DNA from: Hemiscyllium ocellatum
Taxonomy: Eukaryota
Reading direction: 5' to 3'
Assembly: GCF_020745735.1 (NCBI RefSeq)
Contig: NC_083430.1
Coordinates: 31,114,909-31,178,908 of the forward strand
DNA length: 64,000 nucleotides
Shown here: piece after piece, positions 6,490 through 63,759 of the stretch
Layout: each line of letters starts with the position of its first letter
How positions within the stretch are numbered: the stretch's first letter is position 1
Notes under the pieces: generated by a model
Told to the model about the DNA's origin: nothing
Database searches by the model: none
Seen by the model: the letters and a program-made list of their open reading frames with translations, nothing else
Translations under genes and position numbers: made by a program

Positions 6490-7330
6490 TCCTGGATGTA
6501 GGTTTGCTCACTGAGCTGGAAGATTCACTTTCAGACGATTCATCACCATACCAGGTAACAGCTTCAGTGAGCCTCCAGATAAAGCACTGTTGGTGTAGCC
6601 CGCTTTCTATTTATTTGTTTTGATTTCCTTCATTTGGTGATGTAATTTCCTGTGGTGATGTCATTTTCTATGGTACATCATTTCCTGTTATTTTTCTCAA
6701 GGGGGTAGTAAATGGGATCCAAGCCAATGTGTTTGTTCATTGAGTTCCAATTGGAATGCCATGCTTCTAGGAATTCTCGTACGTGTCTCTGTTTGGCTTG
6801 TCCTAGGATGGATGTGTTGGCCCAGTCAAACTCACTCCCCACTCTCACGAGTATCCTGACATACAGATGAGGAAGAAAACCATTTTGACTGGGACAACAC
6901 ATCCATCCTGGGATAAGCCAAACAAAGACACACACAAGAATTCCTAGAAGCATGGCATTCCAACCAGAACTCTAACAACAAAGACATTGATTTGGATCCC
7001 ATTTACCACCTCCAAAGAAAAAGAACAGGAAATGACATCACAACAGGAAATGACATCACCAACCCAAGGAAACCCAAAACATATAAATAAAAAGCGGTCT
7101 ACACCACCAGTGCTTCATCCGGAGGCTCACTGAAAACGAACCTTCCAGCTCAGCAAGCAAACCTGTATGGTAAAAACAAAAAGCTCTTCCTGATGAAGAG
7201 CTTTTGCCCGAAACATTAATTTTCCCGCTCCTTGGATGCTGCCTGATCTGCTTTTCCAGCACCACTCTAATCCAAAGCAAACCTACATCCAAAATCTCAA
7301 CCTGAGCTGCAAATTTTCTCAAAACTCGAT
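6490..7330. mobile_element. Penelope-like element, inverted pair of 3' fragments
   Basis: Minus arm 6490-6835 encodes FDWANTSILGQAKQRHVREFLEAWHSNWNSMNKHIGLDPIY (GIY-YIG end). Plus arm 6860-7330 is the same sequence in opposite orientation. Confidence 0.85.
7185..7275 (+). repeat. Short hammerhead-motif repeat (family A) nested in the Penelope arm
   Basis: CTGATGA-A-GAGC-TTTT-GCCC-GAAAC at 7190-7214 followed by GGATGCTGCCTGATCTGC; the motif AAGCAAACCT occurs on both sides of the insert. Confidence 0.7.
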
Positions 7331-8039
7331 AACCTCTTACCTCCTTTTAGCAATGTTTATATTCTGGTAATATTCAAAACAGGGAGAATGTATTACCTTT
7401 TAGTTAATGCATACTGTTACTATCTTTATACAGGCTGATAACATTAAAAGAGAAATAAATTTCCCAGTGACTTACACAAGTTACATGACAAGATTTCAAC
7501 TATTACATTTTTATTATTAAACTAAAATCAACATTGACTAAACATTACTTACTAAGCAATTCATACACAAAACTACAGATAGGATATTCCTTATTTACTT
7601 AACATTACTGCAAACCTTTCACTATGCTTATGCATTAAACTACACTCTCCATAGAAACAGAGTCATGCATTTAAAAAAAATGAAACTATGCCGGGCATTA
7701 GCAGGATATTCAAGCTTTACCACTCTCGAGTGAATGTTTAAGTGTCTTTTTGAACAAATTTCCCTGCACTCAATTTTCTGAGTGTAATTTCCTGTAGCAA
7801 GTTACCCCTGAAGATTCCTCAGTGTTCACCTCTCCACAATCTTCATTTCCTTTCCTTGAACAAGGGTTCCATCTTCATCAGCCCTCAGCTGAGCAGTTTC
7901 CAAATGGCACAGGAGCACCTGTTTTCGGTCTTCTCTCCCATTTTTTTCAGTCTGAACATCTTCAGGTATTAAAGCTTGTGCTTTACATGAATATGTTTCA
8001 TTTGAAGATTCTGTTCTATTATAGCAGGTCACTTTTTTT

Positions 8040-11334: not shown

Positions 11335-11580
11335 TCCAAAACAGAAATTGCTGGAAAAGCACAGCAGATCTGGCAACATCTGTGGAGAGAAATCAGAGTT
11401 AATGTTTCAAATCGAATGACCCTTCCTCAGAACTGGGCTTTGCACAGCAGATCTGGCAGTATCTCTAGAGAGAAGTCAGAGTTAATGTTTCAGATCCAGT
11501 GAGCCTTCCTCAGAACAGAGCTTTTCTAGCAATTTCTGTTTTTGTTTCTGATTTCTAGCATCCCAGTTTATTCAGTTTTC
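11335..11580 (-). repeat. Fold-back short repeat (family B) with two tandem hammerhead-like motifs
   Basis: Inverted ends AAAACAGAAATTGCTGGAAAAGC / GCTTTTCTAGCAATTTCTGTTTT; internal ~83-nt tandem duplication, each unit reading GTT-CTGAGGA-..-GAAACATT-AAC on the minus strand (11398-11433, 11481-11516). Confidence 0.75.
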
Positions 11581-16610: not shown

Positions 16611-16690
16611 ATGAAGAGGCGCAATGCTGATTGCAGCAAGATCAGGAGGCCGTTAAAACGGAACAGAATCACCGAGGGGATATACGGCAG
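16611..16690 (+). CDS. MACO1: Macoilin (TMEM57) coding exon 1
   Basis: ATG at 16611 reads MKRRNADCSKIRRPLKRNRITEGIYG-S, the macoilin N-terminus. 80 nt, ending at donor CAG|GTAACA (phase 2), just downstream of a CpG island. Missed by the ORF track. Confidence 0.97.
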
Positions 16691-17859
16691 GTAACAAAGA
16701 AAAAAAAACACGCACAAAATGCAAACCTTCGACACCATAACAAAGGTTTATTATTATTATTAGTCGTTATTAATGAAAATAAATGGTACCCTGCCATAGT
16801 GAGGGAAGCGTTTGCTGGCGCTGGTTCTGGGTGTGTTTCCCTTAGACTAGGCCGCAGAGAAGCCTGGGGCTCGCGTAATAGAGAGGGCGGGGGGGAGGGG
16901 AGGTATTTGGAAACAGCATTATTTTCTCATTTCGGATGTTCTGGAAATATGTCTTTTGTATAATACTTTTTTTTTAACAAATAATGGTTAGAACGAGTGC
17001 TTCTATCTGTTGTGGTGCTGCTGTTTTCTAATGACATTGTAATGAAAGCAGAGTGAGGTGCAGCAGAGGGCTGCTGCTGTTACATACTTCAGTCAGACCT
17101 GTCACATTCTGGTCTCTGACCAGATAAAGTTCTAATGCACTTCTGATCTGAATTGTGGACTATCTTTTGTACTGTATTACTTTTCTTTGGTGTTGGACAT
17201 GACTGATCAATTTTGAAAAGTGTTATCCTGTATTGTTTTTGATCTTATTGATATTTGGCAAAGGTGTGAACAATTCTGAAATGCCTGTGCTTTCTTTCTT
17301 TTGTTATTCCAATGGACAAGTTTCTTTCCCTCCTCCCTTGCCTATTCAGTTTTAATGATGTCACTTTCAACTATGACCGAGTAGGTAATTTTTAACAGTT
17401 TTACAGAATTGATTTTTTTTCATGAAGGGAGGAGTTGATAGTAATAATCAACTGTTGTACATCATGGCTTTCTGCAATTTTGTATTGTCTATGTAAAAGT
17501 GTCTTTTAGTTTCTGCATTTCACTTTTTTTAAGTAGAAATTGTACCATGAAATTTATATTTGTTTTGTTTTCTCCCAGTCAAGATTAAACATGGCAAAAT
17601 ATTACTAAATTAGCATTTAATGTTTCAACTGCCATGTTTTATTTTGAATGAGATCTTATTCCAGATGTTGTAAAATTAAAGTACTTAGTAATCCTAATAC
17701 TTTAGCATTTTGTATATCAAAGAACTATTTAAAATCCAACATACTTTTGTGTGCAACTGTGATGATCAAAGTCTGCATTTATGGAACATAATTCAAAACC
17801 AATTAAATATTTTTTGAACTAAAATCATTATTGAAGTGGGGAGGTACATGATGGCCTGT

Positions 17860-20059: not shown

Positions 20060-20140
20060 ATAAGGGCTTATGCCCGAAACGTCGATTCTCCTGCTCCTCG
20101 GATGCTGCCTGATCTGCTGTGCTTTTCCAGCACTACACTA
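20060..20140 (+). repeat. Family A short repeat, 5' truncated within the hammerhead motif
   Basis: AAGGGCTTATGCCCGAAACGTCGATTCTCCTGCTCCTCGGATGCTGCCTGATCTGCTGTGC; homologous to 7190-7270 and 47988-48095. Confidence 0.75.
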
Positions 20141-20954: not shown

Positions 20955-21165
20955 GTGTTACCGTGATTTGGAGGTGCCAGTATTGGACTGGGATGGACAA
21001 AATTATAAGTCACACAACACCAGATCATTGTCGAACAGGTTTATTTGGAAACACTAGCTTTGAGTGTATCACAACCACCTGATGAAGGAGCAGTGTTTTG
21101 AAAGCTAGTGCTTCCAAATAAGCCTGTTCGACTATGATCTGGTGTTGTGTGACATAACTTTTGTT
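20955..21165. repeat. Fold-back repeat (family C) with ~65-bp inverted arms and a hammerhead motif
   Basis: Arms ~20997-21061 and ~21101-21164 are reverse complements; CAC-CTGATGA-AGGAGCAGTGTTTT-GAAA-GC-TA-GTG at 21076-21110. Confidence 0.8.
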
Positions 21166-24409: not shown

Positions 24410-26640
24410 GAAGATCAGAAGTGGGATTGGTTGTACTTGCAGATAGAGCAAGTAATTAAGGAAGTTAACAACGTTTCCGTTTATCACGGGGAAGCTCAAT
24501 AGAAAAGTAGAGATGTTATACAGGACACTGGTGAGATTAATACCTGGAATGACATTCTTATGTTTCCTCATTGGAAAACCATAAGACATAGGAGTGGAAG
24601 TAAGGCCATTCGGCCCATCGAGTCCAATGGCTGATGAGCAATTCAACTCCACTTATACGCATTCTTCCCGTAGCCCTTAATTCCTTACTAGATCAAGACT
24701 TTATCAATCTCTGCCTTAAAGACATTTAAAGTCTGTCCTCCGTGGCAATGAATTTCACAGGCCTATCACTCTCTGGGTAAAGAAATGTCTCCTCATTTCT
24801 GTTCAAAGTTGACTCCGTGTAATTCTAAGTGTGCTCACAGGTCCTAGTCTCCCTGCCTAATGGAAACCACTTCCCCTGCGTCCACCCAATCTAAGCCATG
24901 CATTATCTTGTATATTTCTATTAGATCTCCCTTCAACCTTTTCAACACTAATGAATACAATCCTAGGATCTCCAGCCATTCATCATATGTTAGGCCTACC
25001 CTTCCAGGGGTCATCTGTGTGAATCTCCATTGGATATGCTCCAGTGTCAATATGTCCTTCCTGAGGTGTGGTGTCCAGAATTGGACGGTATTCTAAATGG
25101 GGTCTAACTAGAGCTTTATAAAGTCTCAGAAGCACATACAGATCTACCTGGTTCCTAAACTGATGCCACTATCCCATGAAATGGAATATCTCTCTCCCAC
25201 ACCAATTTCTTAGCCACGTGTTTGCTTCCCTAATTTTCTTATCCCCTTGCCAATTAGCACATGGCTCGGGCAGTAATCCAGCGATAATGACCCTAGAGGA
25301 CCTGTTCTTCAATTTTCTTCCTAGTGCTTGATTGCCAGACAGGTCCTCCTTCCTGGCCTTGCCGATGTTGTTAGTGCCAATGTGGACCACAACAACTGGA
25401 TCTTCTCCCTCCTCCCTCCTGCTCCAATATCCTTTCACACTGGTTGGAGATGCCTGCCTGGTGCCAGGTTGCAGGACAACACACCCCAAGCGGGATTCCT
25501 GACCTAGCTTGCATAGGATACTATCTGTCCCTCTAATTGTAGAATCGCCTGTAACAACTACTTGTTTTTATGCTCCCCCATCTTGGAAGGCCTTCTGCAC
25601 CATGGTGCTGTGGTTCGTTGGCTCATCCTGTACATAGCCCTTTTCCTCATCCATATAGGGAGCTAAAATTTCATACCTGTTGGGCAAGGTCAAGGGCTGA
25701 GGCTCCTCCACTCCTGAATTTAGGATCCTCCTACCTGCCTCAGTTGCAGTCACACCCTGTTGTCCCTGATCACTAACTGAATTTGAATTACTTAATCTAC
25801 CGGGTGTAACTGCCTCCTAAAACAAAGCGTCCAGGTAACTCTTTCCCCCTCCCAGATGTGCTGCAGTATTTGAAGCTCAGATTCCAGAGTATCAATTCTG
25901 ATCTGGAATTCTTCCAATAACCAACACTTGCTGTAGATGTGATCAGCCAGCTCCCACATCACACAGCTACAGTACATCACCTGTCCAGCCATCTCTTCCT
26001 AGTTAATTAATTTATACAAATTTGAGTCAAATAATTTCTAGTACTTCTCTAAGGTCTTATTCAACTAAACTAATAGTAAACTTTTAATCAGTCAATATCA
26101 GTTGGAACACCTAATCTTAGTAACACCCGAGAGTCCTTTTTTTTTTGGTTAGAACAACAGGGCAGGTGGGAGACACTACATGTGTAGTGTCTCGGGATTC
26201 AGCGGCTGCCCAAATATATATCCAGCAGCCCTCTGCTCCTTGTTGTGGCCTCTCCCTCTGTTGCTCCTTTAAAAACTGTTCTTGCGCTCTCCCTTCCTGG
26301 CAGCCATCTGTTCTCTCCATCCTCTCTCATCGCCGCTCTGTAAAAATGGAGGCCTAGAGCCATGGACAGACTAGGCTTGTATCTGCCAGGGTTTAAAAGA
26401 ATGACCGGTGTCTTAATTGAAACATCTAAGATCCTTTAGGGTCTTTACAAGGTAGATGTGGAGAAAATGTTTGTTAATTATTGGAGACTCTAGAACTAGG
26501 GATGACAATTTTTAAAATCATTGATCGCTGAAACATTTTCTGAGGGTCATCTGTCTTTGTGACTCTGCTTCCATTACCTTTAGGAAAGAGTCCTTGAATA
26601 TTTTTAAGGGAGAGTTAGTAAGAATCTTAAAAACAAATCG
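24410..26640 (+). mobile_element. Old CR1 3' fragment split by the insertion at 24579-26355
   Basis: GTTATACAGGACACTGGTGAGA on the left continues as GACAGACTAGGCTTGTAT..TTAATTGAAACATCTAAGATCC on the right. Confidence 0.6.
24579..26355 (-). mobile_element. Internally deleted CR1: 5' UTR + ORF1 + RT C-terminus/3' end
   Basis: ORF1 pieces MAGQVMYCSCVMWEL..CWLLEEFQIRIDTLESEL and esterase-like DPVVVVHIGTNNIG..ANTWLRNWC join near 25138 to LEHIQWRFTQM..RLKGDLIEIYKIM and the 3' terminus. Confidence 0.85.
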
Positions 26641-27911: not shown

Positions 27912-29024
27912 CACTCTCAGATGGCCAAGATCTTCACTGATAATGTCCTGAATGGGGTAGTGGGTTGGTACGTCATTGCCTGGAGACAGAACTGAACAAG
28001 ACATGTTGACATTGCAGCTTCAGTAGCATGGAGAATGAGTCATTCAGTATCTGATTCCCTGGGGTTTCTGTACCGTTTTACAATACTCAAATGTGAGACA
28101 ATGCATAATATAAAGCTGCGACACTGTTTGATGGACTTGAGCCCTGTCCAGGAACAGCAGTCTGCTTAATTTTTGCCTTAGCACCTGCATTCTACCCACC
28201 ACCTCCGCTGCTAATAAACAGTGGCAATTGCATTTAAACACCACCTCACACTCTACCACAATCACAAAGGAGGACAATAGTAGTAAAATCTAGAACATTG
28301 TCCCAAATTGGATGTAATTTGGCATTTCCTTATTGCTGTTCAATCATAATCCACTTAAAACCATTGCCGCCCATTAACATGTGCTTTTATTCCAGATAAA
28401 GCTTACATGATATCAGGATAAGAAGGATGGGCAATGCAGGTTACTTTGATCTGTCACCAACCTAAAAGGATTGCCTTAAAGCTGTAGTATTTCAGAACTG
28501 TGTAGTCAACCTATTAGTAAGGATAAGTATTCTGCTGTAAATCGTAACAATAAATAATGGTGTAATCTTGCTGATGTAGCTCAAAGCTTTCCTTGGCTTT
28601 GTTTCTAAACAAGTAAACAATGACTGTCACCTTTTTCAAATGTAAAATATATAAACCTTCAAAGACCAGAAAAGAATTTGTTACAATCCTATTTCTAAAT
28701 TTGAGAAGCAGCCAGATAATCTGGCCTTCTCTCAAAGATTTAAAATTAACAGGGGAATAAAAGATGTTATTCTCGCCTCTCTTGTGGGAAAAAAAACTTA
28801 CTGCTGCCTTGTTTGTATTTTGAAATGTATTACTGTTGAGAATTATTTGCTTCCAGCTTCTTTCTCTAATCTGATTACCCTATTGATAATCATATGTTAA
28901 CTCTGCTCTGTGATTTGGCTACAAAGATGACAGGTTGTGTGTTATTCATTAGTTAATGACTCACTCATGCCTGTGTAGTCACATGCATGAAGCATATCAA
29001 GGAAAAGCAAAATAGATTTTTTTT

Positions 29025-29215
29025 TTGGAAAGATTTGTAGCTCAGGTTGAGGTTCTGAATGTAAATTTGCTTGCTAAGTGAAAGATTTGATTTCAGATGT
29101 TTTGTCACCATGCTAGGTAACATCATTAGTGAGTCTCCAGTGAAGCTCTGGTGTTATGTCCCACTTTCTGTTTATTGGTCTTAAGGTGGGTAATATTATT
29201 TCTGGTTCTTTTTGT
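29025..29215 (-). mobile_element. Penelope terminal fragment with decayed hammerhead
   Basis: Homologous to 6490-6650 and to the reverse complement of 34880-35010. Confidence 0.75.
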
Positions 29216-34327: not shown

Positions 34328-34844
34328 TTGGTCATTTAGAAATGATAAGAAAAAGTAGGGAAAAAAGAAAATGAAGAATTAAAGTATTCTAATTTTGATG
34401 ATATCCTCCACTTGGATAAGCAAAATAACTCATTGTAACAGAATACAAATATCCAAGGTATCTGTCAGACCTTTGTTCAAACAAGAGTTTTTGAGCTTGT
34501 ATGTACCCTGTAATCCGTTTTGATGTTTGCTAGGAAAAAAAAACAACTGAGTTTTTTGAACGTAATATGATTAGGAAATGAGTTTCATTGTAAAATGCAT
34601 TGAGAGCTTTTTGGTATTGTAGTAGAACATTTAGGGTAATATGCATTTCAGTTCATATCATGTTCCTTTATTCAACTGTTTTGGCATAATCTTTTTGGCA
34701 AGTATGTCCCGAGAAGTCTCCCCTTTATGAAGAGCATTAGAAGTAGCTGTCAAAAATTTGCCTTGTTAGGGAGAGACTTGAACTGCCTTGGAACTGCTAG
34801 CATGGTTTGTTGCCATGTTCCCCAAGACCTTGTGCAAACATTTG

Positions 34845-35012
34845 GAACTGGATGTAGGTTTGCTTTGCTGAGCTGCAAGCGCTTCATCCAGAGGCTCACT
34901 GAAGATGTTGCCTAGTATGGTGACGAAACGTCTGAAAATGAATCTTTTCAGCTCAGCAAGCAAACCTACATCCAGAACCTCAACCTGAGCTACAAAATTT
35001 CTCAAAACTCGT
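34845..35012 (+). mobile_element. Penelope terminal fragment with short inverted arm
   Basis: Matches 7110-7330; CTGGATGTAGGTTTGCT at ~34848 is the inverted copy of AGCAAACCTACATCCAG at ~34959. Confidence 0.85.
34896..34935 (+). ncRNA. Minimal type I hammerhead ribozyme motif (predicted)
   Basis: TCA-CTGAAGA-T-GTTGCC-TAGTAT-GGTGAC-GAAA-CG-TC-TGA: complete core, 6-bp stem II with G-U pairs, palindromic ACGT stem III, GUC cleavage triplet, 3-bp stem I. Activity untested. Confidence 0.7.
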
Positions 35013-36019
35013 TAGAGGTTTGGAACCACAGCTTTTGATATTGTAATTATAAAAGTTGGTTATATGTATTCATGTGCAAAAATCCTAATTGTTTTCTAGC
35101 TATATCTACTATTTTTGTGTTTTAGAATCATTGTATTCTTGTGCATTTTGAGGGTTTACAACAATCCAGTTTTTTTTTTATCGAATGAAAGCAAGACTTG
35201 CAATTGTTGGTAGCTTTCATTGCAAACAAATGTCCCAATGTGCTTTACAGTCAACATTGTGTATCTGGAGAAAGTTGAGGGAATGCTTGGGTTGCACAGA
35301 AAACTTAATATATTGTTTGTGGTTTGAGCTCTATTATGGTAAGTGGGATAATTGCCAGGGAAGTTATTGCAGCACATCTGCAAAAATGTTGTTTCCATTT
35401 TCTTGTCTCTTATTCATTGAATATTTAGTATATTAAAAATGTTACAGCATTTTTACATTATATAACTTTTTGGTCCATTTAGATTTTGTACATTGTTTTG
35501 TGTCCTGCACTGTCCTTTTCTCTTGCAAAACACAACTGAAATGTTTTTGATACATGCTTTTGGAAAGGTTGCTCAAGCAAAAATTGCTAATCGTTTTGCT
35601 AACCTAAATGGTGTTCTGATTAAACTGGAAATAGAAACAGAAGATTTGATTATGCTTGAAGAGCTGATCCGTAAATCTTAATTTATGATCAACACTCAAA
35701 TTGTTTATTGTGAAATTCAATGTAAACATCTAACTGATCAAATACTACTTCATAAGCGACTTAGAATCGTTTGAGGCTTATTTTAGTGGAGCAGTTATTG
35801 CAGGATCAAGAATTCAAACTTGAACAAAATTAGTACAGTGATTACATGTTTTTCATGGAATACAATACAAACAACCTGTTCATAAAATCAAAATCAAAAT
35901 AAGTAACAGACATTTTAACAAAAGAAATTGAAAACTAACAATAGATTACAGTGGAAAGTTGTTTTTCTGTTTCAGCCCAACCCCAAACAGTTGCCTGTCA
36001 AATTTTTCATGAATTTTTG

Positions 36020-37384: not shown

Positions 37385-40300
37385 TAAGAGCTGCTCCTTT
37401 TTGTTTGAGGTATTTTAGGTAAGCTGCAATGACTCTTTTATTTGCTGTTGCATTGTTTTGGAACTTTGGGAAAAAAACAATAGCAGTTTTAAAAGGGAGA
37501 AGAGCAAACTAAGGAAGTACCTGGTGAGGACAGTGCAGGAGAGAGAGAGAGAGAGAACCTGCACAGTTAGCGCCTTTGCTGTTTGAATTTGTGTATCGCT
37601 GGACATCGGAGTCCATCTGGGAAAATTAACAAACAGTGAAATTCACAACTAATCTTGGAGGAACTGTTGGGTGACGTTCACAGCACAGAATCAGATAAGT
37701 TAATTGTTGTTTTAAGTCTGTCCGAGAGAGGCTGCAGTAGTGAGTATCGTGGATTCTTTCTTAATTATATGTTTTTGGAGATAAGTCTCTTCATTAAACT
37801 TAAAATATAAGCCATAGCTATTAATTTAACCTGGGGCAGTGTTTGTAGAGGAATAAGATGGTGTTATTTTCTGGGTCTGTAGATTGTGAAGGAGCAAAAA
37901 TGGCCTTTGCAGTGATATGTACTACTTGTCAGATGTGGGAGTTTAAAGAGAGTTGAAGGGTTCCTGTGGATTATATCTGCCAGAAATGCTGTTGGATACG
38001 AATCTTATCAGATCGGTTGGAGGGACAGATAGAAGCGATGAGGAATTTGCAACAGCAACAGTATGTAATGGATAGCAGTTATAGGAAGGGGGTGGGGGGT
38101 GGGGAAGAGAGAAGAGTCTTAGATACAGTCACATAGATGGGTTAACTCCAGGAAGGGTGAAAGAGGTCAGCACCTCGGGCAGGAGTCTTATGTGGATATA
38201 CCCATTTCAAACAGGTATGCTATTTTGAAAAATGTAGGCGGTGACGGATTCACAGGGGAACGTTATGGTAGGGGATTTTAACTTTCCAAACGTGATTGGG
38301 ACTGCCGTAGTGTTAAAGGTTTAGATGGGAGGAATTTCTTAAATGTGTACAAGACAATTTTCTGATTCAGTATGTGGATGTACCTACTAGAGAAGGTGCA
38401 AAACTTAACCTACTCTTGGGAAATAAGGCAGGGCAGGTAACTGAGGTGTCAGTGGGGGAGCACTTTGGGGCCAGTGACCATAACTCTATTCGTTTTAAAA
38501 TAGTGATGGAAAAGGATAGACCAGATCTAAAAGTTGAAGTTCTAAATTGGAGAAAGACCAATTTTGACGGTATTAGGCAACAACTTTCAAAAGCTGATTG
38601 GAGGCAGATGTTCACAGGTAAAGGGACAGCTGGAAAATGGGAAGCCTTCAAAAATGAGATAACAAGAATCCAGAGAAAGTATATTCCTGTTGGGGTGAAA
38701 GGGAAGGCTGCTAGGTAGAGGGAATGCTGGATGACTAAAGAAATTGAGGGTTTGGTTAAGAAAAAGAAGGAAGCACATGTAAGGTATAGACAGGATAGAT
38801 CGAGTGAATCCTTAGAGTATAAAGTATACTTGAGGGAAATCAGGAGGGCAAAACAGGGACATGAGAGTGCTTTGGCAAATAGAATTAAGGAGATTACAAA
38901 TGGTTTTTACAAATATATTAAGGACAAAAGGATAACGGGAGTGAATAGGGCTCCTCAAAGATCAGCAACGTGGAGCCACAGAAAATGGGGAAAATACTAA
39001 ATGAATATTTTGCATCAGTATTTACTGTGGAAAAGGATATGGAAGATATCGACTGTAGGGAAATAGATGGTGACATCTTGCAAAATGTCCAGATTACAGA
39101 GGAGGAAGTGCTAGATGTCTTGAAATGGTTAAAGGTGGATAAATCCCCAGGACCTGATCAGGGGTGTACCTGAGAACTCTGTGGGAAGCTAGAGAAGTGA
39201 TTGTTGGGCCTTTTGCTGAGATATTTGTATCATCAATAGTCACGGGTGAGGTGCTGGAAGACTGGAGGTTGGCAAACATGGTGCCACTGTCTCAGGGTGG
39301 TAAAGACAAGCCAGGGAACTATAGACCAGTGAGCCTGACCTCGGTGGTGGGCAAGTTGTTGGAGGGAATCCTGAGGGACAGATTATACATGTATTTGGAA
39401 AGGCAAGGACTGAATCAGGATAGTTAAATGGCTTTGTGCGTGGGAAATCGTGTCTCACAAACTTGATTGAGTTTTTTGAAGAAGTAACAAAGATGTTTTG
39501 AGGGCAGAGCAGTAGATGTGATCCATGTGGATTTCAGGAAGGCGTTCGACAAGGTTCCCCATGGGAGACTGATTGGCAAGGTTAGATCTCTTGGAATACA
39601 GGGAGAGCTAGTCATTTGGATACAGAACTGGCTCAAAGGCAGAAGACAGATGGTAGTAGTGGAGGGTTTTTTTCAGACTGGAGGTCTGTGACCAGTGGAG
39701 TGCCACAAGGATCGGTGCTGGGCCCTCTACTCTTTGTCAATTATGTAAATGATTTGGATGCAAGCATAAGAGGTACAGTTAGTAAGTTTACAGATGACAC
39801 CAAAATTGGAGGTGTAGTGGACAGCAAAGAAGGCTATCTCCGATTACAACAGGTTCTGGACCAGATGGGCCAATGGACTGAGAAGTGGCAGATGGAGTAT
39901 AATTCAGATAAATGCGAGGTGCTGCATTTTGGGAAAGCAAATCTTAGTAGGATTTATACACTTAATGGTAAGGTCCAAGGGAGTGTTGCTGAACAAAGAG
40001 ACCTTGGCTTGCAGGTTCATAGCTCCTTGAAAGTGGAGTCACAGGTAGATAGGATAGTGAAGAAGGCATTTGGCATGCTTTCCTTTATTGGTCAGAGTAT
40101 TGAGTACAGGAGTTGGGAGGTCATGTTGCGGCTGTACAGGACATTGGTTAGGCCGTTGTTGGAATATTGCGTGCAATCCTGGTCTCCTTCCTATCGGAAA
40201 GACGTTGTGAAACTTGAAAGGGTTCAGAAAAGATTTAAAAGGATGTTGCCAGGGTTGGAGGATTTGAGCTAAAGGGAGAGGCTGAACATGCTGGAGTTGT

Positions 40301-40705
40301 TTTACCCTGGAGTGTCAGAGGCTGGGGGGTGACCTTAAGGAGGTTTACAAAATTGAGGGGCATGGATAGGATAAATAGACAAAGTCTTTTCCCTGGAGTC
40401 AGGGAGTTCAGAACTAGAGGACATAGGTTTAGGGTGAGAGGGGAAAGATATAAAAGAGACCTAAGGGGCAACTTTTTTCCACACAGGGTGATACGTATAT
40501 GGAATGAGCTACCTGAGGAAGTGGTGGAGGCTAGTACAATTGCAACATTGAAGAGGCATTTGGATGGGTATATGAATAGGAAGGGTTTGAAGGGATATGG
40601 GCCAGGTGCTGGCGGGTGGGACTAGATTGGGTTGGGATATTTGGTCAGCATGGACGAGTTGGACCGAAGGGTCTGTTTCCATGCTGTACATCTCTATGAC
40701 TCTAT
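37385..40705 (+). mobile_element. Near full-length CR1 LINE with one internal deletion
   Basis: 5' UTR; ORF1 from ATG 37900 (MAFAVICTTCQMWE..DYICQKC..RLEGQIEAMRNLQ, CxxC..CxxC plus coiled coil, one stop); deletion near 38265 into APE (GDFNFP); frameshifted RT (SGVPQGSVLGPLLF, FTDDTK); CTCTATGACTCTAT tail. Confidence 0.95.
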
Positions 40706-47984: not shown

Positions 47985-48100
47985 GTTCCTGTTGAAGGGC
48001 TTATGCCCAAAATGTCGACTCTCCTCCTCCTTAGATACTGTCTGACCTGCTGTGCTTTTCCGGCGCCACACTTTTCGACTCCAGCATCTGCAGTGCTCAT
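47985..48100 (+). repeat. Family A short repeat with decayed hammerhead
   Basis: CTGTTGA-A-GGGC-TTAT-GCCC-AAAATGTC followed by the family A body. Confidence 0.75.
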
Positions 48101-50195: not shown

Positions 50196-51929
50196 AATTT
50201 TTTTTTCGTTTAGTGTTTAACTTGCTGTTCCATCTCTTTCAGGTATGCCCAGCTGAAATTCTGATCCCCTCTGACAGGTTTTCCCTTCTAACCTCCTTTT
50301 TTTTTTTCCTTTTTTTTCTCTTCACCATAATTGCTCGCCTTGTCACTTCTTGCGTTTGACAAGGTATTTGCCAAAACCCATTTCCACAGTTAGCTCACGT
50401 TCCTTAGTGACTGCCTCTGGCTCAGACTCACCCTTTCAACTGAAGTTTCATCCTTTTTTGTGTTTTGAATCTACCTGGTGTCACAGATCTCTCCATGGTG
50501 TACAATGCTTCTCACACACAGCTGCACTCCGAGATCCATTCTTGAGATCTAATACCATCCTGATTCTTCCAGTCTACCTGCATGTTGAAATCCCCCATAA
50601 CAACTGTAGTAACATGCCCCAGTTCCACCTCATCCTCTGTTTCATTTGACCTTCTAACAGGAATGTTTTCTTTTCCTTTCCAGCATTAAGGAATGCAACA
50701 GAGGCCCATACCCTCTGGAACCTTCTTCCTCTACCCTTCCATATGACTCCATGTCCTTTTCTAATCCCAACCCCTGTTGTGTATTTACAGTCCCTTTGAC
50801 CCAGTTATGATGAAGGGTCATACCTGAAATGTTAATATTGCTTTCTGTTCGCACATGTTGTCAGATCTGCTGAGTTTTACCAGCCATTTCTGTTTTGGGC
50901 CTGGATTCAAGTCCTACTTGCTCTTAATGTGTTTCGTTACATGTCTGAACAAAACTGGTTGTTTAGCCAATTTAGATTTTTTTTAAACATGACTTCAGCT
51001 CTATCAATATTAAACATGGCTGACTTCATCAGGGCAGCCTGTTTGACTGGCACCTCATCTACCATCTACCACCATCCACTTTCACTTCTTCCACCACTGA
51101 TGCACAGTGGCAGCAGTGTGTAGCATCTATAATTAGAACTGCAGCAACTCGCCACAAGAGCTTTGTGGTGCAAATCCTTGCCCTCTTTATCCCTCCCAGT
51201 CAAGTGAAGACATAGCTCAAAATGCAGCTTTGACATTCCTCAAATAAATTCATCCATACAGTGACTGAAATAATCTTGACTCTAGCAAAAGTTAGATGGC
51301 TTTTTTTAAAAAAGTGATTTGATAATTTCCTAGTTACTGGACATGAGCTCTGGACAGTTAACCCATCTTTGACGAAGATTACATCCTAATGCGATTTTGA
51401 GAGGAAAAAAATTAGCGGGCTTGAGATATTCAACTTAGATGAGGCAGTGTTTCTTTTGAACTTGACTGTTTCATTACAGCTACAATTTGTAGTGGTTAAG
51501 TAGGCTGAGACCTTTGACTGGAAAATGCAAAAAGATAGAAGCAAACAACTTATTTTGAAACCATCTTTGGCACATAACTAGTTACCGGGTAGTTTGTCAA
51601 CCTGAAAATGATCCAAATCTGTTTTCAGTTAGTCAGTCCTTTATCCATGCTAATGTATGACACCCAATGCCAAGAGCTTGTACGTTGTGCAGTAACCTTT
51701 CATGTGGCACGTTATCAAGTGCGTTTTGGAAATCCAGATGTCCTACATGTTCCCTTTTTTATTCACCCTGCTCATTTGTATCTTCAAAGTTCTCTAAATT
51801 TCTCCAGATATGATTTTTCTTTTAAAGCTATATTTGCACTGTATTTTAAGATTGCACTTGCATAAAACAAGGATACACTTAATGGAAGAGTTTTTATTGT
51901 GTGTCAGAAATAAAATGCAAGAGCAGAAA

Positions 51930-58526: not shown

Positions 58527-58598
58527 TCCTCTGTAGTATAGTGGTTAGTATCCCCACCTGTCACGTGGGATACTGGGGTTTAGTTCCCTGCTGGAGGG
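58527..58598 (+). pseudogene. tRNA-Asp(GTC)-derived sequence
   Basis: TCCTCTGTAGTATAGTGGTTAGTATCCCCACCTGTCACGTGGGATACTGGGGTTTAGTTCCCTGCTGGAGGG is collinear with vertebrate tRNA-Asp (anticodon GTC at 58560-58562). T-loop/B-box and acceptor stem are damaged. Confidence 0.85.
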
Positions 58599-60742: not shown

Positions 60743-63300
60743 GCTTTGAATTCTTTTTGGTGGGAAATGTCTTTGGCATGCTGCAATATGCATTTATTTC
60801 TAATATTGGTTTTGAGTTGGAGAAAGGCTATCAGTACTCCTGTCACAAGAAGATGCAACACTTTGAAATAGTGTGCTTGTATCTTCCTGTCGTCATCTTG
60901 ACAATTGTATGAATTTGTGAACTGCAAAAGCTTGACTTCAAGAAACCATCATTTATATTATTATTCCATCATTGTTTGTTTTTCATTCCTTCCTTCCTTG
61001 ATCTTAAGTCATCAAATTATTTTTGTTGCTAAGTGAAAACTCTATCATCAGACTGGAGTATTGTAGCCAGTTTGATTTAAGAAAATATTTTTGCCATTGG
61101 TTAACTCTTTTTGTACAGCAACTATTTACAAAAGTGAGTTTGAGTTGTTTAATATTTAACAAAGTACTATCAAAATAACATTAGAGCACAGTTTTATTTT
61201 GTGCAGAAGTAACTCCACCTAATTCTGACTATATTCAAATTAAAATCCATTCTTCCCAATACTGTGCAAGTTGTTTTGACAGAATTGTTGTTTTCCAGTT
61301 GCATCAGCGCTAGTGCGAGTTGACTTGATGCTTATCCTGTAATAGACATGAACGTATCATTGACCTTTTTGGTTTTGATTTTGATGTGACAGCAACTTTG
61401 AGACTAGTCAGTTGTGAATTGTCAAATGACAGCAACTTCTGGCATCTGCACATGTGCAGGTAAACGTGGAAACCCAGAACTGTCAGTAGTTCTCAACTTA
61501 TACACTGTACTGTTGCATTGCTCAATAATGGAATCTGTGCAAAAATTAAATGGCATTCATTTAGACTAGCTACTTGTTAATAGCATGCATAGCAGATTTT
61601 GGTAGTGTGAAAGGTGACATTTACTTCTGAGCTTTGTCCTGGCCCTGAAAATGTAATTTTATAAGCTTGGAGTCACATTCCCCAGAAGAGAATTGCAGGT
61701 ATAGATTTCAGAAACAATTAATATTTTCATCTTGTTTCTGTCCTTTAACATGAGATACACATTGCAGTTTTCGTTTTTCTTCTAGTCTCTTATTTTAAAT
61801 GTAATTTGTTATTTTTTTTTCCTGCATTACAATGTGTGCATTTGAGCAAGATTCTAAAATTTAGTTTTTAAGTTTCCCTGCTCATACAACAGATATCCTT
61901 GACAGCAGGCCATTTCGGGCCATATACCTGAAAACTGGTTACCTCTGCTGATTAGTCCAAAGTAGTAACAACTATTTGACATTGTGAATGGTGCAAATAG
62001 TTGCTTCTCCATTTGCAGCAAAATCTGGGCAATTAACACAGGAGGTAGTTGTAAAATGTGAGAAAGCCAAAAACAAACATTTGTTGTAAGTGATAAGTTT
62101 GGACACCAGGTTTAAGTCTGCATATTATCAGAAACAACAAAGGTCAAGATTACTTTGATTCTTGAACATGAATTTTATTTTTAAATTATCTGGTTGTCAA
62201 ATTGTTAACCGTTCGATGTCACTGCAGTTATAAACACCTCTGAGACCAGAAGAAAATTTGATGATACCATTTTTAATGTATGTTTCTTCATGTTCATTGT
62301 GTTGTCAGGGTTGCTAACTGCTATCAGCTATCAGCTAGTTCCTTGTTTTATGTTATCAACTTTCAGTGGGTTGACAAAAGAAACACGTGAATTCCCAATG
62401 TCTTTAATTAAACAGAAAATAAATGGATTCTACAAAGTGGGAAGGTTCCACATTTTAATCAGTTTGATTTCAGCAAGAAAAGTAGTTAATCCATCAGGAT
62501 GTTGGTCAGTCTGTAAACTAAGGAATGGAAATTCAGGCAGTGTTCTTGAATGCCTGACTACTTTTTATAATTGCAAGTTTTTTTTTCTTCTGTATTCCTC
62601 CTTGAATGAGCAGGTGGAAATATGAAGGCCAGATTGGGTTCAGTTTTGATATATGCTGCAGTTGATCTGAGATTTGCTGTGTAGATTATTTACATGTATA
62701 TTCATATCCAGGTGAGGAACTAAAGGCCTGAAACCAATTAAAAGATACCCACTGGAAAATCTGAACCTTTTTGCAACTTTGAGTTCCACATCTTGAATGA
62801 ACAGATTGGGGAATTGGATATGATACAGTGAAACTTCACTGGGATACTATCTGCAGTCTTAAAAGCAAACATGAAGGGTTCTTTAGATTCCTGATATTCT
62901 AGGATGATTTGATGGAATTGTTTAGTTAAGAAGAGGTAGGAGAAGGTGTGAATAAGTAAACTATTAAGGGACATGGATTCAAGATTAAATTCAATAGATT
63001 TAGGACAGTATGTTTTTATGTCAAATATGCATTTTCAGAGTAGATTGTTGTAACAGACAGCTTTGCAAACATTTAATATTAGGATAAAGAGATATTTGAA
63101 GGGAAAGGGGAGAGCAACCAAACAGGCAGCTGGGATTAGAACCACTACTTGTATGGACTATTTGGACTTGATTGTTTCTATGCAATTTGATAGTGGTCTG
63201 ATAAATAGATAAGTTTCTAAACTCTGGTCACTTGATGACAAAGTCAGCGCATTGAAAAATAAAATTCATTGTCTGAAGTAACTTTTCTTTTCAATTGCAG

Positions 63301-63442
63301 CACTTTCTTGTACCTTAAGTTCCTTGTTGTGTGGGCACTGGTATTGCTGGCAGATTTTGTCCTTGAATTCCGCTTTGAATATCTTTGGCCTTTCTGGCTC
63401 TTCATCAGAAGTGTTTATGATTCCTTCAGATACCAGGGTCTG
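63301..63442 (+). CDS. MACO1: Macoilin (TMEM57) coding exon 2
   Basis: Acceptor ACTTTTCTTTTCAATTGCAG| and donor CTG|GTAAGT. 142 nt encoding (S)TFLYLKFLVVWALVLLADFVLEFRFEYLWPFWLFIRSVYDSFRYQGL. Splices in frame to exon 1 (AG+C=Ser; 80+142=222 nt). Confidence 0.97.
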
Positions 63443-63759
63443 GTAAGTTGTATAAAGACTTTGTTACTAAAATATACCAGTTTTCTGTCATGTGATTCAA
63501 TGCACAGCATTACTATAATCTTCTTTGAAAATAGTGCTTCCCTTAGAAACTGTGATCAGAGCCTTTTATTTATTTGTATTTTAAACAGTTTGCAGGAAGA
63601 TTTATGAAATACCATAAAATGAAGCAACCCAGGGCGTCTTTGCTTTCATAACTACAGACCGTGTAGTTTTTTTTGTATTTTAGACCTTTATGAAAGAGTG
63701 CTTGAGCACCAGTTGAAGTCTTGTGGCCAATTTTAGAACCAGACTTTAGGAAGGATAAG

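What the first reader, a model, noticed from the sequence alone, without database searches (positions are those of the whole stretch)
34896..34935. Apparently intact minimal hammerhead ribozyme on the sense strand of the macoilin pre-mRNA
Seen: TCA-CTGAAGA-T-GTTGCC(TAGTAT)GGTGAC-GAAA-CG-TC^TGA has every hammerhead core base, a pairable stem II, a palindromic 1-bp stem III and a GUC site (predicted cut after 34932). The sister copies at ~6530-6570 and ~29092-29142 (both minus strand) have core mutations. Established: Penelope-like elements carry minimal type I hammerheads that generally cleave as dimers. Inference: this motif is transcribed within intron 1 and could nick the nascent RNA if a partner sequence is available.
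Basis: partly seen in the sequence, partly recalled or inferred. Interest (0 to 1): 0.7.

Follow-up and report, generated by a model that had tools for sequence, protein, structure and literature searches.

The report
Penelope-type minimal hammerhead relic in intron
The motif is a real, sequence-intact minimal hammerhead ribozyme, but it sits in a 170-base dead copy of a Penelope-like jumping gene of a kind very common in this genome, and on its own it is not expected to cut the macoilin RNA.

Summary
Bases 34896-34935 (+) carry every invariant hammerhead core base, a 6-bp helix II, a 3-bp helix I and a GUC site with the cut after 34932. A strict descriptor finds 2 such motifs in the window and none in 300 dinucleotide shuffles.

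The motif belongs to a 170-bp insertion (34849-35018). It has an 8-bp target-site duplication, a 31-nt inverted 5' arm and a 43-nt tail on one side only, which is the published insertion scar of Penelope-like elements (PLEs). It shows the published marks of PLE minimal hammerheads: an extra base between A9 and G10.1, a G10.1-C11.1 pair, palindromic ACGU in place of helix III, and a long helix II.

It lies on the sense strand of macoilin intron 1 (exon 1 at 16611-16690, exon 2 at 63301-63442).

Cleavage of the host RNA is not supported:
- No helix III can form within one copy.
- No intact same-family partner lies on the + strand of the window.
- In predicted folds the scissile C is 97% paired in another helix.
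- Published single minimal hammerheads are inactive in vitro.
- Rfam hammerhead models do not match.
- No RNA reads could be laid.

Its intactness fits a young copy, about 4.5% from the consensus. Earlier notes of this scan report hundreds of such elements in this genome. It is ordinary.

The parts
34841..34848 (.). Left copy of the target-site duplication, TTTGGAAC
   Evidence: Read directly; identical 8-mer at 35019-35026.
34848..34878 (-). Inverted 5' arm: reverse complement of element bases 34946-34975, 31 nt with one indel and one mismatch. It ends exactly where the tail begins.
   Evidence: inverted repeats 34848-34865/34958-34975 at 100% and 34865-34878/34946-34959 at 93%.
34879..35018 (+). 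Main arm: 5'-truncated copy of the 3' end of the repeat family, about 4.5% from a crude 4-copy consensus
   Evidence: Homology to 29023-29149(-), 6492-6588(-), 7109-7164(+) and 7275-7331(+).
34896..34898 (+). Helix I 5' strand, UCA (positions 2.3-2.1)
   Evidence: Pairs with 34933-34935; only 3 bp.
34899..34905 (+). Core box CUGAAGA (C3-A9)
34906..34906 (+). Unpaired U between A9 and G10.1, a hallmark of PLE minimal hammerheads
   Evidence: feature described in PMC4209133.
34907..34924 (+). Helix II, 6 bp (G10.1-C11.1 closing pair) with loop UAGUAU
   Evidence: Pair probabilities 0.78-0.98 in the insertion context.
34925..34932 (+). GAAA box, palindromic ACGU (A15.1 C15.2 G16.2 U16.1) and C17. 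The predicted scissile bond is after 34932.
   Evidence: A helix III is possible only between two copies.
34933..34935 (+). Helix I 3' strand, UGA (1.1-1.3)
34976..35018 (+). 43-nt tail present on one arm only
   Evidence: The inverted arms here and at 6492 both stop at ...CATCCAG, before this tail. A 30-40 bp tail is described for PLEs in PMC8557442.
35019..35026 (.). Right copy of the target-site duplication, TTTGGAAC
16611..16690 (+). Macoilin exon 1 coding part (ATG to the GT donor at 16691)
   Evidence: Pfam PF09726 9.6e-09, profile 1-25.
63301..63442 (+). Macoilin exon 2 (AG acceptor at 63299-63300, GT donor at 63443)
   Evidence: Pfam PF09726 3.8e-29, profile 26-72.

Best explanation
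The motif is the minimal hammerhead carried in the 3'-terminal region of a Penelope-like retroelement family, or a non-autonomous derivative of one. One short retro-copy of that region was inserted into intron 1 of macoilin. It has the usual PLE scar: a 5'-truncated main arm, an adjacent inverted 5' arm, a tail on one side and an 8-bp target-site duplication. The ribozyme design serves the source element's own RNA, where two copies lie in tandem or near each other and can form the shared helix III (inferred from the literature). This copy was dead on arrival. Its core is still intact because the copy is young, not because the host keeps it. As a lone monomer in the pre-mRNA it lacks helix III and is predicted to fold with the cut site buried, so it most likely does nothing to the macoilin transcript.
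For: - Motif and coordinates.
- Beyond chance: (2 observed, 0 of 300 shuffles).
- All four non-descriptor hallmarks of PLE minimal hammerheads named in PMC4209133 that can be read from one copy are present: the extra base 9^10.1, G10.1-C11.1, palindromic 15.2/16.2, and a long helix II.
- Repeat family with three other copies in the window.
- Inverted arm, one-sided tail and target-site duplication match the PLE insertion structure described in PMC8557442. A second insertion of the same family (6492-7331) is a long head-to-head hairpin whose inverted arm stops at the same element base.
- After insertion the hammerhead decays as fast as the rest of the copy: 5/40 against 16.7% overall in the 29-kb copy, and 4/40 against 8.5% in the 6.5-kb copy. 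This copy shows 1/40 against 4.5%.
- At 4.5% per site, 14 required bases all survive with probability about 0.5 (my arithmetic).
- Folding.
- Literature: single minimal hammerheads are inactive and dimers weak (PMC4209133). Eight of nine Xenopus dimer elements did not cleave, and about 43% of retrozyme copies lie in introns (bioRxiv 10.64898/2026.07.22.740005).
Against: - No autonomous PLE (RT plus GIY-YIG) of this family is in the window, so the link to PLEs rests on architecture and ribozyme design.
- No Rfam hammerhead model matches, even at E<=10 on 63 bases.
- Secondary-structure energies ignore tertiary contacts and proteins, so a low in vivo activity cannot be excluded.
- No RNA data could be examined.
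Confidence: 0.85

Rival explanations
1. The intact sense-strand hammerhead cleaves a fraction of nascent macoilin pre-mRNA in vivo. It would do so with a same-family RNA in trans or with a chaperone, and would lower or modulate macoilin expression.
For: The core is intact and on the transcribed strand of intron 1. The genome is said to be rich in such elements (earlier notes), so trans partners may exist. PMC4209133 suggests host factors may raise activity in vivo.
Against: There is no helix III in cis and no intact same-family partner on the + strand of the window. The trans helix III is only 4 bp, -3.1 kcal/mol. The double-hammerhead fold is less stable than two monomers. C17 is 97% paired elsewhere. 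Single minimal hammerheads are inactive in vitro (PMC4209133). A cut in an intron that is removed anyway would matter only if it is faster than splicing.
Confidence: 0.04
2. It is a solo monomer of a non-LTR retrozyme (a tandem-repeat, circRNA-forming hammerhead element) and not a PLE fragment.
For: It is small, non-coding and hammerhead-bearing. A 2026 preprint argues that animal retrozymes are non-autonomous PLE derivatives and that monomers are spread evenly along chromosomes.
Against: Retrozymes carry canonical type-I hammerheads with loop-loop contacts in 150-450 bp tandem units (PMC7229834). Here the motif is the minimal variant, there is no tandem, and the copy is a 5'-truncated hairpin with a one-sided tail. 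If the preprint is right, the distinction is largely one of naming.
Confidence: 0.07
3. The relevant feature is the 31-bp inverted repeat. In the pre-mRNA it forms a long hairpin that feeds small-RNA or editing pathways, and the hammerhead is a passenger.
For: The 176-nt insertion folds at -71.4 kcal/mol, z = -7.2. There is a weak match to a plant miRNA precursor model (MIR391, 24 bits).
Against: The MIR391 score is far below its gathering score of 70 and the family is from plants. The hairpin is the ordinary by-product of PLE integration. No small-RNA data exist.
Confidence: 0.03
4. The hammerhead-like motif is a chance arrangement in an unrelated repeat.
For: The bare core pattern is expected 0.56 times per window. 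No Rfam hammerhead hit.
Against: The full descriptor gives 0 of 300 shuffles. The family consensus of three copies is itself an intact motif. The motif shows features that were not in any search pattern but are reported for PLE hammerheads.
Confidence: 0.01

Closest known systems
Minimal hammerheads (min-HHR) of metazoan Penelope-like elements (Cervera and De la Pena 2014, PMC4209133)
   Same: Type-I topology. CUGANGA and GAAA boxes. An unpaired base between A9 and G10.1. G10.1-C11.1. A 6-bp helix II. No loop 3 and a palindromic 15.2/16.2, so that helix III forms only in a dimer. Mostly found as single, truncated, widely scattered copies. Reported in fishes, coelacanth, amphibians and reptiles.
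   Different: Helix I is only 3 bp here, against 4-5 bp in the Schistosoma families and 2 bp in D. virilis. No full element with RT/EN of this family is in the window. Activity is untested.
PLE insertion architecture (Craig et al. 2021, PMC8557442; Evgen'ev and Arkhipova 2005)
   Same: Strong 5' truncation, an inverted 5'-truncated copy directly adjacent, and a 30-40 bp tail at one end only.
   Different: The tail here is 43 nt and the whole insertion is only 170 bp, a mini-hairpin without any coding part.
Non-LTR retrozymes of animals (De la Pena et al. 2020, PMC7229834)
   Same: Non-coding hammerhead-bearing retroelements. The hammerheads of salamander units also work as dimers.
   Different: Those are tandem units of 150-450 bp with canonical hammerheads and are expressed as circRNAs. 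This is a lone hairpin copy with the minimal variant.
Conserved intronic hammerheads of amniotes (HH9, HH10; Rfam RF02275, RF02277)
   Same: Type-I hammerhead on the sense strand of an intron of a protein-coding gene.
   Different: [quoted passage not shown] None of these holds here, and the Rfam models do not match.

Membership tests
Hammerhead ribozyme (catalytic core) | Invariant bases C3 U4 G5 A6 G8 A9 G12 A13 A14, an A15.1-U16.1 pair, H17 | tested here: met
   All bases are present at 34899-34932. A15.1-U16.1 can pair only with a second copy.
Hammerhead ribozyme (catalytic core) | Three helices around the core within one folding unit | tested here: not met
   Helix II is 6 bp and helix I is 3 bp. 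Helix III cannot form in one molecule because the loop would be 2 nt.
Hammerhead ribozyme (catalytic core) | Self-cleavage at the predicted site | not testable with these tools
Rfam hammerhead families (RF00163, RF00008, RF02275-RF02277) | Covariance-model score at or above the gathering score | tested here: not met
   No hammerhead hit at the gathering score on the window, nor at E<=10 on 261 or 63 bases. These models expect a helix III.
PLE minimal hammerhead (PMC4209133) | [quoted passage not shown] | tested here: met
   U34906.
PLE minimal hammerhead (PMC4209133) | G10.1-C11.1 pair and an enlarged helix II (6-8 bp) | tested here: met
   G34907-C34924; 6 bp.
PLE minimal hammerhead (PMC4209133) | Palindromic 15.2-16.2 with no or tiny loop 3 | tested here: met
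   A-C-G-U at 34928-34931.
PLE minimal hammerhead (PMC4209133) | Consensus families with compensatory changes in the helices | tested here: inconclusive
   There are only three copies. The changes are one-sided: A-U to G-U at 34910, and G-C to G-U in the 6.5-kb copy. No further copies turned up in the public collections.
PLE minimal hammerhead (PMC4209133) | Location in the flanking repeat (pLTR) of an element encoding RT and GIY-YIG endonuclease | not testable with these tools
   No such ORF is in the window. The only RT (38317-40622) belongs to a LINE.
Penelope-like element insertion | 5' truncation with an adjacent inverted 5'-truncated copy | tested here: met
Penelope-like element insertion | Tail extension at one end only; flanking target-site duplication | tested here: met
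   Tail at 34976-35018, absent from the inverted arm. TTTGGAAC on both sides.
Non-LTR retrozyme | Head-to-tail tandem units, each with a canonical type-I hammerhead | tested here: not met
   Single copy, no tandem, and the minimal variant.

The most novel reading that the evidence does not exclude
Young, sequence-intact minimal hammerheads that land in the sense orientation in long introns, here in macoilin intron 1, are cut at a low rate in vivo. They would be helped by abundant same-family RNAs in trans or by RNA chaperones. PLE mini-insertions would then impose a small, orientation-dependent cost on host transcripts.
Probability: 0.04. Interest if true: 0.6.

Novelty: new member of a known kind. 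Interest (0 to 1): 0.15.

Why it matters
Taken alone it matters little. It is one more copy of a class of element described since 2014 and, by this scan's own earlier notes, present in hundreds of places in this genome. Its only use is as a clean test substrate. It offers a young intact copy in a sense intron beside two mutated sister copies in the same window. That is a natural matched set for asking whether lone minimal hammerheads are ever cut in vivo, a question the literature leaves open.

Tried and rejected
- Rfam at gathering score on the whole window, and at E<=10 on 261 and 63 bases: no hammerhead family. The MIR391 (24 bits) and HOTAIRM1_3 (7.6 bits) hits are noise.
- Two searches for sequencing runs. 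Only contig-level runs exist, none is on record as RNA, and there are no raw reads.
Nothing was laid. So there is no evidence on expression, RNA ends or orthologous presence.
- Exact-pattern scans for the family's hammerhead in metagenome contigs (twice) and viral contigs: 0 matches.
- The search of earlier findings by sequence: blank.
- A possible downstream helix III using CUGAAAA/UUUUCAG (34932-38 with 34945-51): rejected. It does not place A15.1 opposite a U, and it is not kept in sister copies.
- Heterodimers with other hammerhead families in the intron: rejected. The 21079 motif has AGCU, not ACGU. The relics at 20062, 47986 and 50807 have broken cores and non-matching helix I strands.

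Full report
**1. The observation**

In hammerhead numbering:
- UCA is the 5' strand of helix I (34896-98).
- CUGAAGA is C3 to A9 (34899-34905).
- One extra U follows (34906).
- Helix II is GUUGCC paired with GGUGAC (34907-12 with 34919-24), closed by G10.1-C11.1, with loop UAGUAU.
- GAAA is G12 to A15.1 (34925-28).
- CG is 15.2 and 16.2 (34929-30).
- UC is U16.1 and C17 (34931-32).
- UGA is the 3' strand of helix I (34933-35).

The predicted cut is after 34932.

The two core boxes plus GUC alone are not rare: 1 match against 0.56 expected. I then wrote a descriptor that also demands a helix II of at least 5 bp, a palindromic helix III segment and a helix I of at least 3 bp. It finds two motifs in the window (34899-34932 and 21079-21107, both on the + strand) and none in 300 dinucleotide-preserving shuffles. 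The motif is therefore real and not a chance arrangement.

**2. The sister copies**

BLAST of the neighbourhood against the window finds copies at 29023-29149 (-), 6492-6588 (-) and 7109-7164 plus 7275-7331 (+).
- The 29-kb copy has G5>A, G12>A and G16.2>A. The last two are CpG decays.
- The 6.5-kb copy has A9>C, C11.1>U and A15.1>U.

The majority consensus of the copies is itself an intact motif. The present copy differs from it in the 40-nt motif only by A>G at 34910, which turns an A-U pair of helix II into G-U.

**3. What the motif sits in**

The sequence 34848-34878 is the reverse complement of 34946-34975. Homology to the longer sister copies begins at about 34878 and runs to about 35015. 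TTTGGAAC stands at 34841-48 and again at 35019-26.

The unit is thus a 170-bp insertion (34849-35018) with four parts:
- a short inverted 5' arm;
- a 5'-truncated main arm that holds the hammerhead;
- a 43-nt tail (34976-35018) that the inverted arm lacks;
- an 8-bp target-site duplication.

The same family's insertion at 6492-7331 is a much longer head-to-head hairpin. Its inverted arm stops at the very same element base (...CATCCAG).

Craig et al. 2021 describe Penelope-like elements this way: high 5' truncation, an inverted 5'-truncated copy immediately adjacent, and a 30-40 bp tail at one end (PMC8557442).

**4. The ribozyme design**

Cervera and De la Pena 2014 (PMC4209133) list features of PLE minimal hammerheads that were not part of their search descriptor:
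- the G10.1-C11.1 pair;
- a palindromic 15.2-16.2;
- a longer than usual helix II and a short helix I.

All are present here. The same paper reports such motifs by the thousand, mostly as single truncated copies, in fishes, coelacanth, Xenopus and reptiles.

Earlier notes of this scan on other windows of this genome describe it as shark-like and peppered with such mini-hairpins. I did not test the taxon. I did confirm the architecture independently on this window.

**5. Gene context**

The + strand encodes the start of macoilin at 16611-16690 (Pfam PF09726, 9.6e-09, profile 1-25), followed by a GT donor. This lies in the only CpG-rich stretch of the window. It encodes the next part at 63301-63442 (3.8e-29, profile 26-72), between an AG acceptor and a GT donor. 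The reading frame joins correctly across the two.

Intron 1 is therefore 16691-63300, and the motif lies 18 kb into it on the sense strand.

**6. Would it cut?**

- Within one molecule A15.1 and U16.1 would enclose two bases, so no helix III can form. The motif can be active only with a second copy, as the literature says.
- The isolated 52-nt motif folds no better than shuffles (z = -0.19). The fold with helices I and II holds about 5% of the ensemble.
- In the context of the insertion the inverted repeat makes a strong hairpin (-71.4 kcal/mol, z = -7.2). This hairpin does not overlap the core, and helix II forms well (0.78-0.98). But helix I in the hammerhead register has probability 0.01. 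C17 is paired with probability 0.97, mostly with G34891 in a CAGA/UCUG helix or with G8. The compatible fold holds about 0.8% of the ensemble.
- The intermolecular helix III is 4 bp and worth -3.1 kcal/mol.
- The complete double-hammerhead scores -14.7 kcal/mol. Two separate monomers score -17.2, and an unrelated dimer through the palindromic GAGGCUC scores -27.2. In an artificial head-to-tail tandem the inter-unit helix III has probability 0.004.

These are nearest-neighbour energies without tertiary contacts or proteins, so they lower the odds of activity but do not exclude it.

Partners: the same-family copies in the window are on the other strand and are mutated. The other + strand hammerhead relics in the intron (20062, 21079, 47986, 50807) belong to other families. 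They have broken cores or a different palindrome, and their helix I strands do not match.

Published tests agree. A single Schistosoma minimal hammerhead showed no detectable cleavage, and dimers and trimers showed low activity (PMC4209133). In a 2026 preprint only one of nine Xenopus dimer elements cleaved, and about 43% of retrozyme copies lie in introns.

**7. Is the intactness meaningful?**

The hammerhead part decays like the rest of each copy:

| Copy | Changes in the 40-nt motif | Divergence of the whole copy |
|---|---|---|
| 29 kb | 5 of 40 | 16.7% |
| 6.5 kb | 4 of 40 | 8.5% |
| This copy | 1 of 40 | 4.5% |

(the consensus is crude and includes the copy itself.) At 4.5% per site, 14 required bases all survive with a probability of about one half. 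No selection by the host need be invoked.

**8. Tests that failed or could not be done**

- No Rfam hammerhead model matches at any threshold. This fits a motif without helix III, and the published motifs were found with structure descriptors, not with these models.
- No RNA run with raw reads exists in the index.
I kept those places out of every later search.
- Scans of metagenome and viral contigs for the family found nothing. Covariation could therefore not be tested beyond three copies.

**9. Verdict**

The identification as a Penelope-type minimal hammerhead in the sense strand of macoilin intron 1 is supported. The suggestion that it nicks the host RNA is not supported and is unlikely (about 4%).

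It is a new member of a known kind, of low interest on its own. It could still serve, with the second intact motif at 21079, as a ready-made substrate for testing whether lone minimal hammerheads are ever cut in vivo.

Noticed in passing
window 21006-21156 (+), motif 21079-21107: A second sequence-intact minimal hammerhead of another family lies in the same intron and orientation: CUGAUGA, a bulged A, helix II GGAGC/GUUUU made mostly of G-U pairs, GAAA, palindrome AGCU, cut after A21107. It sits inside a 56-nt, 93% inverted repeat whose arm runs through the cut site.
   Followed up: partly
window 6492-7331: A long head-to-head hairpin insertion of the same family, with arms of about 300 bp at 77-90% identity. 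The left arm keeps the hammerhead (6538-6567, mutated). The right arm lacks exactly the 33 nt from C3 to U16.1, a deletion between two CTGAA repeats (7129-7134).
   Followed up: partly
window 7165-7274 (+); also 20062-20140 (+), 47986-48072 (+): Copies of a third hammerhead mini-element family (..AAGGGCUUAUGCCCGAAACGUCGAUUC.., tail ..GGATGCTGCCTGA.CTGCTG.GCTTTTCCAGC). One is nested in the right arm of the 6492-7331 hairpin. All have damaged 5' core boxes.
   Followed up: partly
window 11405-11520 (-) and 50807-50829 (+): A fourth family, CUGAGGA-A-GGGUC..GAAACAUUAAC, probably CpG-decayed from GAAACGUU. Two units about 83 nt apart lie on the minus strand upstream of macoilin exon 1, and a decayed copy lies in the intron.
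   Followed up: partly
window 34891-34897 (+): GAGGCUC just 5' of the hammerhead is nearly self-complementary. It gives the most stable predicted homodimer of the motif RNA (-27.2 kcal/mol), which would compete with a double-hammerhead.
   Followed up: no
window 38317-40622 (+): LINE remnant with the C-terminal part of an AP-type endonuclease and an RVT_1 domain (Pfam 4.3e-13). It is not a Penelope-like RT by context.
   Followed up: partly
window 25172-25567 (-): An ORF with a weak GDSL-like lipase/esterase match (1.3e-05, below Pfam's cut-off), as found in ORF1 of some CR1/L2-type LINEs.
   Followed up: no
window 58527-58598 (+): A tRNA-like sequence just above Rfam's gathering score (32 bits against 29). 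Another first-stage note calls it a tRNA-Asp-derived SINE head.
   Followed up: no
They lie outside the element and were left alone.
   Followed up: no
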